A DNA stretch of 64,000 bases, from the NCBI GenBank assembly GCA_001179505.1, contig CDMY01000482.1, positions 4,103 to 68,102 on the forward strand. Reading direction: 5' to 3'. The notes under the pieces are model-generated. The model was given only the letters and a program-made list of their open reading frames with translations. It was not told where the DNA came from and did no database searches. This DNA comes from Vitrella brassicaformis CCMP3155 (Eukaryota > Protista > Chromerida). This document shows positions 15,699-23,861 of this stretch, piece by piece; position 1 is the first letter of the stretch, and every line of letters begins with the position of its first letter. A program made the translations under genes and the position numbers.

Positions 15699-16572
15699 AG
15701 CGCTTCATGAAGGACCTGGCCGAGTGAGCTCGAGCTCCTGACACACGCAGAGACTCGCACATTGACCAATACACGAGTTGCATTGTGGTGTGGTCTGGTG
15801 TGGTGTGGTGGTATCTGTGGTGGCAGGTTGGAGTTAGGCGTGTACCGCGAAGTCTTGCAGAGCCACAAGGTGGGTGAGTGAGGTGCTCCAAGTGCAACCC
15901 ATTATAGCCAAAGGCGAGTGGATGTGTCTCAGGCGGGTGACGAGTACCACAACTGTCTGTCCTTCTCTGAGGAGGCGAGGGAGAAACTCGATGCGCTGCA
16001 GGAGAACATCTACGGTGTCGGCCAGACCGCCACGGCCGCACAAGTGCAGCTGGCAGCCAAGGACAACACTATATGTGAGTAACCCACTGTCTGGCGTGCA
16101 TGTGATGTCCGGTGCTGTTTGTGTATATTCAGCGGCCCTTGGGCAGGAGGCGAACAAAGGAGGTGACAAGCGGGTGCTCGTAAGGAGGGCGCAGCCACCC
16201 GCCCTTCATCAGCAAGAGCAGATGGGAGACCCTGCCTTGATTTTTTATGCGAGCTCCTGCCGAGACATGGATGGACTGCAATGGATGACTTGAATAAGTA
16301 AATGGATGGCGTTGACAGCTTGGCCTTCTGTGTGCATGGATGCGGTGCAATCACAGTGTGGAGTGGACGTGCAGGGGTGGGTGGGTGGGTTGATGAATGA
16401 TTCAACTAGGGATGGCCATCCATCAACAAGGTGGGCAAGTCCACCCCATCACATACATACACACATACACAACATACATACAACACAGTACCTTATACAC
16501 ATGTATTCTGCTGATGCACATCGCGTGTATGGATAAATGGATGGAGGCACATGCATCGAATCACCCGCCCGC

Positions 16573-19500
16573 CTAGCCCTCCACCTCTCGCATGAGTCTC
16601 TCTACCTCGCCCTCCACCCGCAGTCTCTGCCAGAACACCCCCTCCAGCACCAACAACCCTCCATCCTCTCTCTTCGCCTTGACCACATGCCGCAGCCGAC
16701 CCTCCACACACATGTGCGCCACAGGGGCGGGCGGCACCCGCACAAACTCCCGCAAATGCGATACCGCCCCGCTTCCAGTGTCCCTGCTGTATGCCTCGTG
16801 GCGATTGCCGTGCCCCGCTGCCAGGGCGTCGTAGATGGCCACCTCACCACCCATGGCAATGGTGTCCTTGGCCGCATCCAGCAGACACGTCGACAAAGAG
16901 GGGCTCTCACCCTGTGGCTGCCGTTTCTGCTGATGGCTGCTCCCCGACCCACCGGCAGCAGCAGCGGTCTTGCTGCTGGTGTTGCTGCTGGTGTCGGTCG
17001 TCTTGTGTCTTTTCACGGCCGGTGCAGGCGGGTCGGGAGGCGGCGGGGGCGCGTAGGTCAGCAGCGTCAATACGGCATCGTTGTGGAGGAGCAGGGGCAG
17101 GGTGACGCCTGATGCACTGTCCTCGAATATGCCGAGAAGGGTGAGTGCGGGGCATGGGGACACCTGCATGTTGGTCGTTGTGGTGCAGCCACCACTGCAC
17201 GAGTAGGGGAGGGGCTGCTGGGTGGTGAGGAGCCTCGCGCCGCACAGGGGACACACCGCACTAACCCTGAGAGACGACATACGCCACAACACGAGTCACA
17301 CATCTCTCTCCTACCTCGTGTCATGTTCTTCTTTCGGACCTACCTGACGGTTAGTGTGGCGATGAGCGACCCGACGAACAGGCGCACCTCACTCTCATTG
17401 AGCGGACAGCGCGCCAGCGTCTGAGGTGCCGTCAGACCCGCCAAAGGCACACCGCCCGACAGCTTGGCCATCTCCCACACGCACCAAAGCCTCCCTTGCT
17501 CCTCGCTTGTCAGCACGGCCTTCTCGCCCCCACACACTAGCTGACCCGCAGCACCCCCGCCCGCATGCTTTCTGGCTATGAGGCCCGTTGGGGCCATGAC
17601 GTATCGATGGCGGTAGTAGCCGGGGTCGACTCGAAACACCGACGGACATGCGGCTGTCGCGTCCGCACCCGCATCATCTGGCTCCGTCCACCCCCGGGCA
17701 ATCGCCTCAGTTCGTGAGGAGACCCCCAGTGCGGTGTGCCACACACACGGCGGCTTGTATGAGAGGCCACTGGCAGCGCGGGGTGAGTAAGTGATGCGGC
17801 CGACCAGGTTGAGATGCCGCTTGTAGTCGTCTTCTCTCATCCCCCCTTGTCGCTGCAGCCAGTCGACCACGAAGCCGGGCAGGTCGCGCGTGAAGGACGA
17901 TGCAGGGGGGGCGGAAGGGGCCTCGGGGTTGGGCAGAGTGTAGAAGCGGATCTTGGGGGTAGGGGCGTGCTGTTGCCTTGTGGGGGTAGTGGTGGTGATG
18001 TGGCGCCAGGCAGCGAGGGAACGGAAGTCCCATATCTGCCCCGGCTGGATGAGGGAGAAGCGACCGAAGTGCGCCGATGGCACCCAGACGTCCAGCCAGC
18101 CGACCCCCAGCACCGATCGGCTCTCAGGGAACGCAACCCTGCCAACAGACAGACAGGAGGAGGATCCACGCCACGATGAGCAACAACGCAGACACACTGG
18201 CCGATTTGGTTCTGTGTGAAAGGTCACCTGATGATGAGACAGGGGGTCGATGTGGCTGCGTCCAGTCCATCCTCATTCTCATCGGCGAGCCGCACCACCA
18301 TGACATCGACCACCATACACCCCTCCAAGCTCACCTCGGTGAACCGACCCGTGGGCACCCTCTCCACCACCTCATGCACAGCAGACACGCTCCCCACCAC
18401 CAGCGGCGCGTAGCCGTCCAGATACTCGCGCGCCGCCATGTCCGCCAGCCGGTAGAGCAGGGATCTCGTGAAGGTGCCATTGTAGCGGTTGTCTCCACTG
18501 CCGATTGTGAGCTGTAGATGCGGCGTGCAGAGCAATGGACACTGCGGCTGGTTGCTGGTGGGGGGCAGGGGGATGGGCAGCGGGACCATGAAGGCGCCAT
18601 TCATGGGGATGTCGGGCAGCATGGTGCTGAGGTGCAGCTGCATCGAGATGCGGGATGGGGAGAGAGAGGGTGAGGGTGAGGGTTGCTCGTTGTCGGTCCA
18701 TGCGAGCACACAGAAGCACGGCGGCTGTGTGGCCCAATAGATGTGCACGGGCACATCCGTCGCCTCCCGGCCGCTCCACACATGACCCTGCCCCCTCTCC
18801 ACATCAGCACTGGTCAGCCGCTGGAACACGATGACAGTCCGGCCGTCCCCCTCTCCGTGCGCCTCATCCGCCCAGCACTCCTTGTGCGTCACGAACAGCA
18901 GAACTCCGCGCATCTCCGTGTCTGGCAGCTCGAGACTCTCCTTGCCGGCTGCCATGAACGTGACGGCATCTGGTTGCGCGACCAGTCCGAGAACGCCGCT
19001 GAGGGGCCACCATGTGCCGCTCTTGTGCGTGACGGCGGGGCTGGTGGGTGGGCGGGGAGGGGCCGGGACTGCCATGACGACGCTGCACTTGTCCAGCTGA
19101 ATGGCCACGGGGGGCGGCCATGTGGATCCTGGCTGCTGGTCGCCCGGTGCTGACTTCTCTCTGCCAGCACCGACAGCGGCAGCGGCAGCAGCCGCCCCGG
19201 TCTCCGTCTGCTCATCTTCCTGCAGAGCGGACTCCCCTCCGACCTTCACGCCGCCTGCCAAGGGATCTCGTCGCATACGCCGGATCCCCGACTGACCCCA
19301 GGGGACCAGTGGCGGCCTGCCATCGAAGAACAGATCCACCACGTTAACACCAGAACCACCATCAGAGAGGACCAGGGGCGTCGTCATCGAGCTGTCGCTG
19401 AGGAAAGTGACCTTGCCGCTGAGACCGCCACGCCAGTCGTGCTGGACCACTAGCACACTCTCGGGCGCGCCGTCCCGGCCATCTCCTTTCTCGGTGATCC

Positions 19501-22084
19501 GCACTTGCCGGTCTTGCGCTGGCTGCATGACGCCACCGACGCCGCGCATGCCGTCGACAAAACACAGGGCCATGCTCTTGCGCTCCATGGTGACGGCCGC
19601 TGACCGCTGCAAATGAATGGACTGCCGGGGGAGGGGCCTGTCCATGAACAGGGGGCCGTCGGAGGCTGGGTCATGCCGTGTCACGGTGATGAACATGCCC
19701 GATGGCTGTCGGTGCTCTGGTGGAGGGGTGGGTGGCTGTGAGGGGGGGCTGGGGAGCTTGAGAGTGAGGTGTGAGTTGGGGGCCATCTTGACGAGCAAGG
19801 AGTCGCTGACGTCGGCGAGGCACGGCCACCGGTACGGCACGGCGTGGGTGAGGGGCGGAGATGAGGATGGTGCGACCACTTCAACATCCATGTCCCCTGC
19901 TGCCGCCTTGACGCGCCCATGGGCCTCCCTCAGGCTCTCCATGCACACGGGCGCCGCCCCGGCATCCTCATGCAGGCTCCCAAGCGCCTCGACAACCGCC
20001 CCCGCCCTCCCCCTCTGCCTCAGTGCCATCACCAGCCGAGCGATCGAGCTGACCAGCACATCTATCTCGGTCATCAGGGGCATCTCCCAGATGTCCGATC
20101 CAAGCATGGGGCAGCACGGGTCCGCGGGGCACTGGTGCGTCAGCATGGACCGGTGAGAGAAGGGCGGGGGCGGGCTGAGGCAAGAGTTGACGATGCGGTC
20201 GACCAGGGGCTTGGCGAGATCGGCTGGTGTGGCGCCCATGGCGCGAATAAAGCGGGGCGGGAGTTTGCGTGTCCAGTCGAGTGCGAGGGAGAAGTGCAGC
20301 CAGCAGATGTTGGATGGGCAGGGGGGCGGCTCGTCGTGGCTGGTGGAGCCCGGAGTGTGGGGCAGCAGCTGGAAGCAGAGGGCTGCCTCCCCGCCGGCCG
20401 GCGCTTCTGTCGTCCGATCGGTGTGGTCGACGAGCAGCGTGCTGAGCGGGCAGAGGGCCACCGCATACTCCACCCGACTAGAACGGCCTGTGTGAAAGGA
20501 TAGCAGTCGGGCACCATGCTGTGTTCAAAGATGAGAGCTCTCCTCTCTCTGTGTTGACTCACCTGGCATCGCTTTGGTGATGAGGTGAGCGCCGTGGACG
20601 GTGAGTTTGGTTCCCCTCTTGAGGATGGTGCCGTGCAGCGTCTCGGATGCCCCCCACTGGTGCAGGAACAGTCGCATCCCGCCTGCCAACATATAGGCGC
20701 CCCATCCAAGGTAGCCATCGACAACCACGCCGCTGCACGAGTGCAGCTCGCTCGGCGGCAGAGCGACAGGTCCATCCCCCTCCATGATACACTCCCCCTC
20801 CCCCTCCCCCCCTTCGTTCTGCGGCTGCGCAGGAGCACCGGGCCACTGTGAGAACGCCATCATGATGCCCATCGATAGCGTCATGTGCGGCACGGAACCC
20901 ACAAAGGCTCTCGCGGCGTTCATGGGCGTGGCCGCTGCACCCAAAGACGACTGAAATATCGACGCATTCGGCGCTCCAGAAGCCGCGGGGAGCGGAGAGA
21001 GCACATCGACGATTGGCGGGGGGTTGCGGAGTCCGTCATCCGTGGAATCGATGTCGGCATTCTCGGCAAGGCGATAGCAAGTGGTGTGGGGGGTCGAGTG
21101 GTAGATGGAGTAACGGTGGCCGTCGTCCCCCTGGTCGAGCGTCATCATCTTGGGCACCAGATGGGTCGTGGCATAGCGGCCGCTCCCGGGTGTCAGCACA
21201 TACCGCCACTGCAGGCTCCGAGTGCCCAGAAACAGCACCGTCGCGCGACTCGACACGTCATCAGGGCCGCGGGGGTGCCGCAGACGCACACAGACGACGT
21301 ATGAGAGCCGCTCGCCGTCCGTCTTGTCAATGGACGTCTTGAGCTTCAGCACAGGGCCCACACTGATGACCTCCCCACACAGACTGGCACTGGCCGCCTC
21401 GCCGGCTGACAAGGGCGGGAGGGGTGTGTCTGGCAGACACACGAGCGGAAGACACTGGGATGCGTCGAGATGCAGGAAGCCCTCAGCACGCCCCTCGGTC
21501 ACCTTCCGCAATGCCCGCCGCACCACTGATCTCGCCACCCGCTTGGTGTAGCTCTGCAGTGGGTGATAGACGGCCGCCCCCACAGGCACCAGAATGGGCA
21601 CACCGAACAGAGAGCGGTCAAAACGCCCAGCGATCTCCACAATGAAGGACTGTGGCGTAAGCTCCGCCTTGCCGTCTATGCCGTCGTCACTGCCATGGTA
21701 ATCCACCGTGAAGACAGCTCTCGCTGGCCCCTCTGATGCCCTTCCGCCAGATGATGTGGATCTCATTGTGGCGGACGTCTCGATGCTCAGAGTGCCCACG
21801 AGGAAGCATCGCTCGTCGAAGTTCGTTTGCGGCTCTTGCCTCGGTGTGAGATCCAGGGCATCGGTCGCTGTCAGGAGGGCCGGTTTGACAAGCCCCGGCA
21901 TGCGCCTGCACTTGCGGCATCTATCCTTGAAGATGGCCGAGGCCGTGTTGTTCCACGAGTGCTCGCGGGAAGCCAGGGCACCCCTGAGACCGCTGAGGAA
22001 GGCCTTTTCCTGGTCGGATATGCAGAAGGTCCTGTCAGGATCATCTGAGATCAGTGGCGGGATGGCCTGTGTTTCATCCTCCAT
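16573..22084 (-). CDS. CTC1: Candidate CST complex subunit CTC1 (multi-OB-fold ssDNA/telomere protein), 4 coding exons, roughly 1750 aa
   Basis: Exons 22084-20563, 20487-about 18230, about 18140-17345 and about 17270-16573 join in frame. Segments resemble human CTC1 as recalled by eye: GEVISVGPVL...VLFLG...QWRYVLTPG...YATTHL; SCSGVV...GAYMLAGGMRLFL...LKRGTKLTVHGAHLI; LDVWV...LIQPGQIWDFRSL; CPLC...C...C then LLGIFEDSASG...LHNDAVLTLL. No database search was run. Confidence 0.72.
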
Positions 22085-22499
22085 CGACTCTCAAAACCTG
22101 AAGGAAGAAAACACGAGGATTCAGGCCAGATTCTGATGATTGCGAGTCTTACCTGCGATGCAAGCATGGCATCAGCCACTGGGTGCTGTCGGTCTCTTTG
22201 ATGAGGACACACAACAAAGATGAGTCCATTGGTGTGTGCAAGTGTCGTTATTCTCTCTGCACTCACCCTCTCGTCCCTTTGGTGGCAGCGGCGATGCGAT
22301 GGCGAAGAAGTTGGGCTTCTGATCCTAATTCAAGCATGGTATCACAACGAGATCTATCATCTGCTCCTTTTCCATCTTTGCGAGCTGATCGAACTGATGA
22401 GATTTCGGCGACAATTGCACGCATCAGGTACGCCAGAAGCTCAGATTGTACCGATACGGCTGCAGAATACATTGCTTCTCTCGCTGTGTGTCTTCCAGG

Positions 22500-23861
22500 A
22501 TGTGGACCCCTCGCCCTCCCGGGGTGCATTCTCGGCCTCACCAGGCCAATACCGCCCCACCACCTGCCGGCGCACGCACCCGTCTTCCCTCCAGCAGCAG
22601 CAGCAACCCTCCCCCTGACCAGATCCGCACCTTCAAGACCATCATCTCGCAGCACCCAGGCTCAATCAGCGTCAAGACCCTTCGCCACTCCCCGCCCATC
22701 CACACCTGCCAGGAGCTCATCCACTTCTGCCACGGCAACCCCCTCGTCCTCATGTACACCCTCGAGATCGACTATGCGGTGGCCACTGCACTGGTCGACC
22801 AGTGCTTCGCCGCCATCACCCCGGCGCCCTCTCGCCTCGGCGACCTGTGGTTGGACGCCCGGTCGCTGCCGACAGGACTGCCCACCATCGACAGGGGGCT
22901 GCAGGGTGGTTTGGCGGCCGGGCAGGTGTTCGAGTTCGCCGGTCCAGCTGGCGTGGGCAAGACGCAGGTGTGCTTCTCGCTCGCCCAGTCGGCACTGATG
23001 CAGCAGGAGACTGGAGGGGGAGGGGGAGGGAGCGTCATGTGGATTGACACCGAGGGCGCGTTCAGCCCAGAGCGGCTGGGTGAGGTGCTCATGAGCCGGG
23101 TGGATGGTGGGGCCACGATGTCGGCCGACAGAGGAGATGACGATGATATGGACATGGATCCCATTGAGCATCCGGCGGTGCGGGAGGCGTTAGGTCGCGT
23201 GCACGTCATGGAGTGCCACTCCCTCACCGACATCGACAAGGACCTCGCACCCCTACTCGCCAATGACACACCAACAGTACCTCCGCACACCGCCAGCAGC
23301 AGCAGCGGCAAGACCAACTGGAAGCTGGTCATCGTCGACTCGGTGACGGCCGCCGCCAAGCGCACCATGACCACCACCACCACCACTGCGCCTCAGCAGT
23401 CGGCCCCCGTATCAGCCATGGGCGCGCGTCAGATGCAGCTCAACTCCCTGGCTGAGAAGCTCAAGGTCATCGCCAACAAGCACGGCATCCCCGTGGTGGT
23501 GACCAACCAGGTGGCCGGCAGGGGCGGATGGGACGAGGCAGGCGACGCCGCACTGGGGCCGCTCTGGCACCATGCCGTCAACTGCAGATTCCTGCTCACA
23601 TACAGCGTGGAGCAGCGGCCGGGTGATGATGACGAGCAGCAGAAGGAGGGGCAGGATGGCGACCAGTCGCAGCCAATGCTGGTGGGTGGTGCTGGGGTTG
23701 GTCGGGCGGGAGTGAGTAGTGTGAAGCTGACGGCTCAGCTGCCGGCGTGGCAGCTGGAGATGGGCGAGCGTGAGCTGATAGTGCAGAAGAGCCCGGTGTG
23801 TGGGCCCGTGAGGGTCAAGTACACCATCCACAGCGGGGGGGTGGCGGAGGTCAGAGAGTGA
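22500..23861 (+). CDS. RAD51B: RAD51 paralog, RAD51B-like RecA-family ATPase, single coding exon
   Basis: LPTGLPTIDRGLQGGL, Walker A GPAGVGKT, WIDTEGAFSPERL, Walker B LVIVDS, IPVVVTNQV, AALGPLWHHAVNCRFLL, RELIVQKSP. The N-terminal TCQELI...PLVLM segment also resembles RAD51B. Confidence 0.88.
   Translation: MWTPRPPGVHSRPHQANTAPPPAGARTRLPSSSSSNPPPDQIRTFKTIISQHPGSISVKTLRHSPPIHTCQELIHFCHGNPLVLMYTLEIDYAVATALVDQCFAAITPAPSRLGDLWLDARSLPTGLPTIDRGLQGGLAAGQVFEFAGPAGVGKTQVCFSLAQSALMQQETGGGGGGSVMWIDTEGAFSPERLGEVLMSRVDGGATMSADRGDDDDMDMDPIEHPAVREALGRVHVMECHSLTDIDKDLAPLLANDTPTVPPHTASSSSGKTNWKLVIVDSVTAAAKRTMTTTTTTAPQQSAPVSAMGARQMQLNSLAEKLKVIANKHGIPVVVTNQVAGRGGWDEAGDAALGPLWHHAVNCRFLLTYSVEQRPGDDDEQQKEGQDGDQSQPMLVGGAGVGRAGVSSVKLTAQLPAWQLEMGERELIVQKSPVCGPVRVKYTIHSGGVAEVRE

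What the first reader, a model, noticed from the sequence alone, without database searches (positions are those of the whole stretch)
16573..22084. Probable unrecognised CTC1 (CST telomere/replication complex) in an apicomplexan-related lineage
Seen: four exons give a protein of about 1750 aa, with ordered segments matching human CTC1 as I recall it. (a) GEVISVGPVL..VLFLGTRSLQWRYVLTPGSGRYATTHL vs VWHRALRPGTAYVLTEL. (b) SCSGVV..GAYML..LKRGTKLTVHGAHLI..VALCPLSTLL vs SYSGAVT..GLYELDG..MRPGVCLQLQDVHLL..LAPCLRG. (c) LDVWVPSAHF..LIQPGQIWDFRSL vs LDVYIEDPHL..LLPGARVHFSQL. (d) A Cys-rich ribbon, then IFEDSASG..LHNDAVLTLL vs LLVEDGTAEA..RNHHVAAALGL. Established: CTC1/Cdc13 diverges fast and is often missed; in Tetrahymena the CST-like complex is p75-p45-p19. 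Inference: a full-length, vertebrate/plant-like CTC1 that would bridge CST evolution in alveolates and help find apicomplexan orthologs.
Basis: partly seen in the sequence, partly recalled or inferred. Interest (0 to 1): 0.8.

Follow-up and report, generated by a model that had tools for sequence, protein, structure and literature searches.

The report
Possible CTC1 telomere protein in Vitrella
A real four-exon gene of the alga Vitrella brassicaformis encodes a 1756-residue protein with no detectable sequence relatives; a protein-language-model search places it nearest CTC1, the large subunit of the CST telomere-replication complex, but no alignment or structure test could confirm this here.

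Summary
The gene is real. Four minus-strand exons (22084-16573) with GT-AG introns of 75, 89 and 77 nt give 1756 aa. This is identical to the public model CEM16740.1 / A0A0G4FQL4, an "uncharacterized protein" of Vitrella brassicaformis CCMP3155.

Every sequence method came back empty:
- Pfam found nothing, including no hit to the CTC1 family PF15489.
- phmmer against PDB sequences found nothing.
- Three word searches found nothing but the protein itself.
- An exhaustive phmmer of residues 509-1260 against 1.84 billion cluster representatives found no real relative.
- A metagenome scan found nothing.

Its motif (c) region aligns just as well to photosystem I PsaB (E about 0.5). The human side of the motifs could not be checked.

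AlphaFold2 without an alignment failed (mean pLDDT 33 and 32), so the tandem-OB test is open.

The positive evidence is thin:
- In the ESM-Atlas feature search the three best cluster sets are all "CST complex subunit CTC1" (0.94, 0.93, 0.92), followed by other OB-fold telomere and repair proteins.
- The protein's only Cys4 ribbon lies in the C-terminal beta-rich domain, as in CTC1 OB-G.
- A weakly predicted three-helix stretch lies at residues 643-703.

My reading is a probable (about 0.55) highly diverged full-length CTC1, not proven. This scan had not noted it before.

The parts
20563..22084 (-). Exon 1. Starts at ATG 22084 and covers residues 1-507 plus the first base of codon 508. Holds reader motifs (a) and most of (b).
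   Evidence: identical to P0001
20488..20562 (-). Intron 1, 75 nt, GT-AG
18228..20487 (-). Exon 2, residues 508-1261 with both end codons split. No real relative among 1.84 billion cluster representatives.
19901..20083 (-). Residues 643-703. Three consecutive predicted helices (643-664, 669-682, 687-703), a candidate counterpart of the CTC1 three-helix bundle. Confidence is low (pLDDT 51-59).
   Evidence: literature
18139..18227 (-). Intron 2, 89 nt, GT-AG
17344..18138 (-). Exon 3, residues 1261-1526 with both end codons split. Holds reader motif (c).
17267..17343 (-). Intron 3, 77 nt, GT-AG. It cuts the C-terminal beta-rich domain just before the Cys4 motif.
16573..17266 (-). Exon 4, residues 1526-1756 plus the stop codon. 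Holds reader motif (d), a hydrophobic-poor insert of about 45 residues (1605-1649) and a C-terminal predicted helix.
17185..17253 (-). Cys4 ribbon candidate C1531-x2-C1534-x14-C1549-x3-C1553, the only such motif in the protein.
   Evidence: The motif falls in the last 300 aa in 1% of shuffles.

Best explanation
The gene most likely encodes a highly diverged, full-length CTC1-type large subunit of a CST (CTC1-STN1-TEN1) complex in Vitrella brassicaformis. The mechanism below is inferred by analogy with human and Tetrahymena CST and is not shown here. A chain of OB folds would bind single-stranded G-rich DNA at telomeres (TTTAGGG-type in the relative Chromera) and at stalled forks. The C-terminal OB with its Cys4 zinc ribbon would anchor the DNA and dock STN1-TEN1. 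The complex would recruit DNA polymerase alpha-primase for C-strand fill-in and limit telomerase. What is shown: the gene and its 1756-aa product are real; the product has no relative detectable by sequence; a protein-language-model search places it nearest CTC1 families. What is inferred: the OB-fold array, the partners and the function.
For: -: the ESM-Atlas feature search with the whole protein gave CTC1 clusters as the top three sets. Scores were 0.94, 0.93 and 0.92 with 194, 188 and 188 shared features. The clusters come from Mucoromycota, Chordata and one unlabelled set, with lengths of 1261-1463 aa. Seven of the ten best hits with a family share a family or clan. The remaining hits are OB-fold telomere or repair proteins (CDC24-OB, SHLD2, SPIDR, POT1).
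- the single CxxC-x14-CxxxC motif lies 225 residues from the C-terminus, between predicted strands. This happens in about 1% of shuffles. It matches the Cys4 zinc ribbon reported in CTC1 OB-G.
- three helices are predicted at 643-703, after the N-terminal third. One search places a three-helix bundle between OB-C and OB-D in human CTC1.
- the low-confidence secondary structure of 238-296 is a run of strands. That of 1203-1275 and 1512-1735 is strands with one or two helices, and the protein ends in a helix.
- full-length Ctc1 is already inferred for the last eukaryotic common ancestor, so a chromerid copy is expected.
- chromerids have canonical telomeres.
Against: - There is no sequence or profile similarity to CTC1. 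Pfam PF15489 and PF15491 gave nothing at E up to 10, and PDB sequences gave nothing.
- There are no homologues at all, not even in Chromera, so orthology cannot be traced.
- Both structure models are unusable (pLDDT 32.9 and 32.3) and their fold searches returned noise. The OB array is therefore unproven.
- Feature-search scores of 0.90-0.94 occur for 4-10% of shuffled proteins by the tool's own note. The gap between CTC1 (0.94) and POT1 or SPIDR (0.90) is small.
- Exon pieces 1 and 3 queried alone gave no CTC1 lead.
- The zinc ribbon is shared with RPA70 and Teb1 and, from general knowledge, with other RPA-like proteins, so it is not specific to CTC1.
- STN1 and TEN1 of Vitrella were not examined.
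Confidence: 0.55

Rival explanations
1. It is another multi-OB-fold single-stranded-DNA-binding protein of genome maintenance, not orthologous to CTC1. It could be a lineage-specific RPA1-, POT1-, SHLD2- or Cdc24-like scaffold. It would bind ssDNA through OB folds and a zinc-ribbon OB but act outside a CST complex.
For: One search also lists CDC24-OB (0.92), SHLD2-containing (0.90), SPIDR (0.90) and POT1 (0.90) clusters close behind CTC1. The Cys4 ribbon is common to RPA70 and Teb1. Earlier notes on this genome report several unusual OB-fold fusions, RPA1-PARP and POT1-like plus nuclease, so the lineage does reshuffle OB proteins.
Against: CTC1 clusters hold the top three places and have lengths closest to this protein. 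No Pfam RPA, POT1, SHLD2 or CDC24 family matches any part. The protein has beta-rich blocks along 1756 aa. From general knowledge, RPA70 and POT1 are only about 600-700 aa.
Confidence: 0.2
2. It is a fast-evolving, lineage-restricted protein with no relation to OB-fold families. On this view the language-model neighbours reflect general features (large, poorly conserved, beta-rich blocks with low-complexity linkers) and the Cys4 motif is coincidental or belongs to another small zinc module.
For: No relative in about 15 billion proteins. No family, PDB or fold match. Feature scores near 0.9 arise by chance in 4-10% of shuffled proteins. Some Cys4 motif appears somewhere in 6.5% of shuffles.
Against: For a chance hit to fall three times on the one family proposed beforehand, out of roughly 20,000 families, is very unlikely. 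194 shared features is in the range that 9 in 10 true family members reach, against 1-2 in 10 chance hits or distant relatives. The Cys4 motif sits exactly where CTC1 and RPA70 carry theirs.
Confidence: 0.2

Closest known systems
CTC1 (human, plant and early-diverging fungal type; Pfam PF15489), large subunit of CST
   Same: Size class: 1756 aa against cluster lengths of 1261-1463 aa. It is the nearest neighbour in language-model feature space. A Cys4 ribbon lies in the C-terminal domain. There is a helical stretch of about 60 residues after the N-terminal third. The protein evolves fast and conserves little sequence.
   Different: No detectable sequence or profile similarity. About 500 residues longer, with low-complexity inserts. 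The seven OB folds, STN1 binding and ssDNA binding are all untested.
Tetrahymena Ctc1 (p75) of the telomerase-bound CST-like p75-p45-p19 complex
   Same: It is the only CTC1-type protein of an alveolate named in the papers read here. It shares the C-terminal RPA70-like OB trio that is conserved in all Ctc1 orthologues.
   Different: p75 has only the three OB folds equivalent to OB-E/F/G. The Vitrella protein has about 1100 further residues upstream, so if it is CTC1 it is the long form.
RPA70 / Teb1 (OB-C with zinc ribbon)
   Same: A Cys4 ribbon inserted early in the last OB-like domain, and a C-terminal predicted helix.
   Different: No Pfam hit to the RPA families (Rep_fac-A_C, REPA_OB_2 and others) in any part. 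From general knowledge RPA70 is about 600-700 aa, so this protein is nearly three times as long. RPA clusters are absent from the listed feature-search hits.

Membership tests
CTC1 (CST large subunit) | Significant sequence or profile match to the CTC1 family (Pfam PF15489/PF15491) or to solved CTC1 chains. This is sufficient but not necessary: 18% of the best Atlas CTC1 cluster and the whole third cluster lack the Pfam hit. | tested here: not met
   hmmscan at E up to 10 on the whole protein and 14 sub-ranges found no CTC1 hit. phmmer against PDB sequences found no CTC1 hit.
CTC1 (CST large subunit) | Seven tandem OB folds (A-G) | tested here: inconclusive
   AlphaFold2 without an alignment gave mean pLDDT 32.9 (residues 1150-1756) and 32.3 (residues 1-1200). 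Foldseek on these models returned noise. Only strand-rich blocks of low confidence are seen.
CTC1 (CST large subunit) | Three-helix bundle joining OB-A/B/C to OB-D-G (Lim et al.; ARODL) | tested here: inconclusive
   Three helices are predicted at 643-664, 669-682 and 687-703. This is the best-scoring part of the model but reaches only pLDDT 51-59.
CTC1 (CST large subunit) | Cys4 zinc ribbon inside the C-terminal OB (OB-G) | tested here: met
   C1531, C1534, C1549 and C1553 form the only such motif. It falls in the last 300 aa in 1% of shuffles. This is met at motif level only. Metal binding and the fold are untested, and the feature is shared with RPA70 and Teb1.
CTC1 (CST large subunit) | Forms a trimer with STN1 and TEN1, and those genes are present in the genome | not testable with these tools
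   Only this 64-kb window of the genome was readable. No note in the scan mentions STN1 or TEN1.
CTC1 (CST large subunit) | Binds G-rich ssDNA and stimulates polymerase alpha-primase | not testable with these tools
   Biochemical property.
RPA70 (replication protein A large subunit) | Profile match to the RPA70 OB families and a length of about 600-700 aa (length from general knowledge) | tested here: not met
   No Pfam RPA family in any part. The protein is 1756 aa. The short-range word search (328-1045 aa candidates) found nothing.

The most novel reading that the evidence does not exclude
Vitrella keeps a full-length, seven-OB CTC1 with the N-terminal OB-A to OB-D module and the three-helix bundle. 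[quoted passage not shown] It would mark the three-OB Tetrahymena p75 as a secondary reduction. It would also give the first seed for finding the still unidentified CST large subunit of apicomplexan parasites.
Probability: 0.5. Interest if true: 0.55.

Novelty: new member of a known kind. Interest (0 to 1): 0.4.

Why it matters
None of the papers found here names a CTC1, STN1 or TEN1 of an apicomplexan or chromerid. The only alveolate example they describe is the truncated Tetrahymena p75.

A 2022 structural paper treated the four N-terminal OB folds of CTC1 as a metazoan expansion. A 2023 review argues from predicted structures in early-diverging fungi and Dictyostelium that they are ancestral. 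A long CTC1 in a chromerid would add an independent supergroup to the ancestral view and give a starting point for profile or structure searches in Plasmodium and Toxoplasma.

If the reading is wrong, the gene is one more lineage-restricted orphan and of little general interest.

Tried and rejected
Searches that found nothing:
- Pfam on the four exon pieces, the whole protein, three junction-spanning parts and ten domain-sized parts. Only sub-threshold chance hits appeared: OprB, DUF7877, FlgK_2nd, CooT.
- phmmer against PDB sequences with exon 3, exon 4, the whole protein, residues 1495-1600 and residues 1170-1320. The only hits were chance ones: a Mycobacterium hypothetical protein, mL40 and PsaB.
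- Word-index homologue searches with exon 2, with P0001 region 1160-1756, and with P0001:1160-1756 region 1-440 for shorter candidates. Each returned only the protein itself or nothing.
- Exhaustive phmmer of exon 2. It found the protein itself plus P0002. P0002 is a tandem-repeat "UNVERIFIED_CONTAM" product from a sturgeon assembly and is not a relative.
- A metagenome scan.
- The Atlas feature search with exon 1 and exon 3 alone gave no usable hit. These pieces cut domains at exon borders.

Structure:
- Two AlphaFold2 runs, both unusable.
- Foldseek against PDB on both models, as a one-sided check, returned noise.

Reads:
That used its only call.
- RNA support for the splice sites was therefore not obtained. 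No run listed is on record as RNA.

Left out:
No CTC1 sequence was available by reference, and I did not type sequences from memory.

Rejected readings:
- RPA70 proper, on size and the absence of profile hits.
- A gene-prediction artefact, on codon-position GC, clean splice sites and identity with the public model.
Full report
**1. What is in the sequence**

On the minus strand, four long open frames follow one another. Reading the junctions gives these exons:
- exon 1: 22084-20563
- exon 2: 20487-18228
- exon 3: 18138-17344
- exon 4: 17266-16573

They are separated by GT-AG introns of 75, 89 and 77 nt, and the frame is kept across every junction. The spliced product is 1756 aa. An in-frame stop lies just upstream of the ATG at 22084.

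GC content at codon position 3 is 0.74-0.79 in each exon. It is about 0.52 at position 2 and 0.51-0.55 in the introns, which is the signature of real coding sequence.

The exhaustive protein search returned a 1756-aa database protein, P0001, that matches exon 2 at 100% identity over residues 509-1260. P0001 is identical to my spliced model. It is CEM16740.1 / UniProt A0A0G4FQL4, an "uncharacterized protein" of Vitrella brassicaformis CCMP3155.

**2. Do the motif matches to human CTC1 hold?**

I could not check the human strings. What could be tested was negative:
- The Pfam CTC1 models do not hit the whole protein, the exon pieces, the junction-spanning parts or ten domain-sized parts at E up to 10.
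- phmmer against all PDB chain sequences finds nothing for the whole protein at E up to 10. The PDB should include the human CTC1 and Tetrahymena Ctc1 structures described.
- The sub-ranges give only chance hits.
- The stretch carrying motif (c) aligns to cyanobacterial and plant PsaB over 64 residues with E about 0.5.

**3. Relatives**

There are none detectable. The searches were:
- word search with exon 2
- word search with the C-terminal 597 residues among long candidates
- word search with the C-terminal part among candidates of 328-1045 aa
- exhaustive phmmer of residues 509-1260 against 1.84 billion cluster representatives
- a JGI metagenome scan

All gave only the protein itself. The single extra hit, P0002, is a 53-residue tandem repeat from a sturgeon assembly flagged as contamination.

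Residues 1-508 were searched only by Pfam, by phmmer of the whole protein against PDB and by the Atlas feature search. They were not put through a homologue search.

The lack of a Chromera counterpart fits either very fast evolution, as is usual for CTC1, or a lineage-restricted gene.

**4. Structure**

With no alignment to feed it, AlphaFold2 failed. Mean pLDDT was 32.9 for residues 1150-1756 and 32.3 for residues 1-1200. Foldseek against PDB on both models, run only as a one-sided check, returned noise. The decisive "tandem OB folds or not" test is therefore open.

These models give only weak hints:
- The one region above pLDDT 50 includes three consecutive helices at 643-664, 669-682 and 687-703.
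- Residues 238-296 are drawn as a run of strands. Residues 1203-1275 and 1512-1735 are drawn as strands with one or two helices, and the protein ends in a helix.

**5. The positive lead**

The ESM-Atlas feature search with the whole protein gave "CST complex subunit CTC1" as its three best cluster sets:

| Score | Shared features (of 256) | Cluster length | Taxa | PF15489 in cluster |
|---|---|---|---|---|
| 0.94 | 194 | 1355 aa | Mucoromycota | 82% |
| 0.93 | 188 | 1261 aa | Chordata | 100% |
| 0.92 | 188 | 1463 aa | unlabelled | none common |

The next hits were CDC24-OB of plants (0.92), a CTC1/SHLD2 cluster (0.90), SPIDR (0.90) and POT1 (0.90).

By the tool's own calibration:
- First hits of 0.9 or more occur for 4-10% of shuffled proteins.
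- 170 or more shared features are reached by 9 in 10 true family members, against 1-2 in 10 chance hits or distant relatives.
- Seven of the ten best hits with a family share a family or clan.

I treat this as a real but unconfirmed lead. It says "OB-fold telomere or repair protein, CTC1 first".

The exon 1 and exon 3 pieces alone gave nothing. The exon borders cut three putative domains, which may explain that.

**6. Architecture against the literature**

Human CTC1 has seven OB folds, a three-helix bundle between OB-C and OB-D, and a Cys4 zinc ribbon in OB-G like those of RPA70 and Teb1 OB-C (Lim et al., bioRxiv 10.1101/815886). The C-terminal half is conserved in all Ctc1 orthologues. Tetrahymena Ctc1 has only OB-E/F/G. 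Full-length Ctc1 is predicted in early-diverging fungi and Dictyostelium, so the ancestor of eukaryotes probably had it (Cai and de Lange 2023, PMC10499019).

In the Vitrella protein:
- The only CxxC...CxxxC motif is C1531, C1534, C1549, C1553 (window 17185-17253).
- It lies 225 residues from the C-terminus, directly after the exon 3/4 junction, between predicted strands.
- In shuffles, such a motif appears anywhere in 6.5% of trials and in the last 300 residues in 1%.
- The helical stretch at 643-703 lies after the N-terminal third, about where a bundle following three OB folds would be.

Both features fit CTC1. The ribbon fits RPA70-like proteins equally well.

**7. Context**

The gene lies head to head with a Rad51-family gene (Pfam Rad51, E 3e-20). 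The ATG of the candidate at 22084 and the Rad51 reading frames from about 22200 are only a few hundred bases apart. This may reflect shared regulation of DNA-metabolism genes, but it is weak evidence. Chromera has Arabidopsis-type TTTAGGG telomeres (PMC3622300), so a C-strand fill-in machine is expected in chromerids.

**8. Verdict**

- My probabilities: about 0.55 a diverged full-length CTC1; about 0.2 another multi-OB ssDNA-binding protein; about 0.2 an unrelated lineage-restricted protein.
- If it is CTC1, it is a new member of a known family. Its value would be evolutionary and practical: it would place the long form in Myzozoa and give a seed for the missing apicomplexan CST.

Those places were sent to no search tool afterwards, and no RNA evidence was obtained. 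No run is recorded as RNA.

Noticed in passing
window 22446-23861 (+), with possible upstream exons from about 22200: A Rad51-family gene (Pfam PF08423, E 3.3e-20; Walker A GPAGVGKT) lies head to head with the candidate gene, a few hundred bases from its ATG. It is probably a RAD51 paralogue sharing a bidirectional promoter region.
   Followed up: partly
They lie downstream of the gene's stop codon.
   Followed up: no
P0002 (MGH0153934.1, Acipenser sinensis, UNVERIFIED_CONTAM): The only other hit of the exhaustive search is a 579-aa product made of eleven copies of a 53-residue repeat. Its E-value of 4.6e-4 comes from one weak match counted eleven times. It is an artefact, not a relative.
   Followed up: yes
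P0001 residues 1248-1311 (window about 17988-18268, spanning intron 2): This stretch aligns over 64 residues with photosystem I PsaB (E about 0.5), sharing GWLD and I-PG motifs. It is a chance resemblance, and a useful yardstick for motif-level matches in this protein.
   Followed up: yes
window 16400-22300: Seven public sequencing runs from four studies hold the stretch, five of them at half or more of its sampled words, under three coded organism labels. None is recorded as RNA, so expression remains undocumented here.
   Followed up: no
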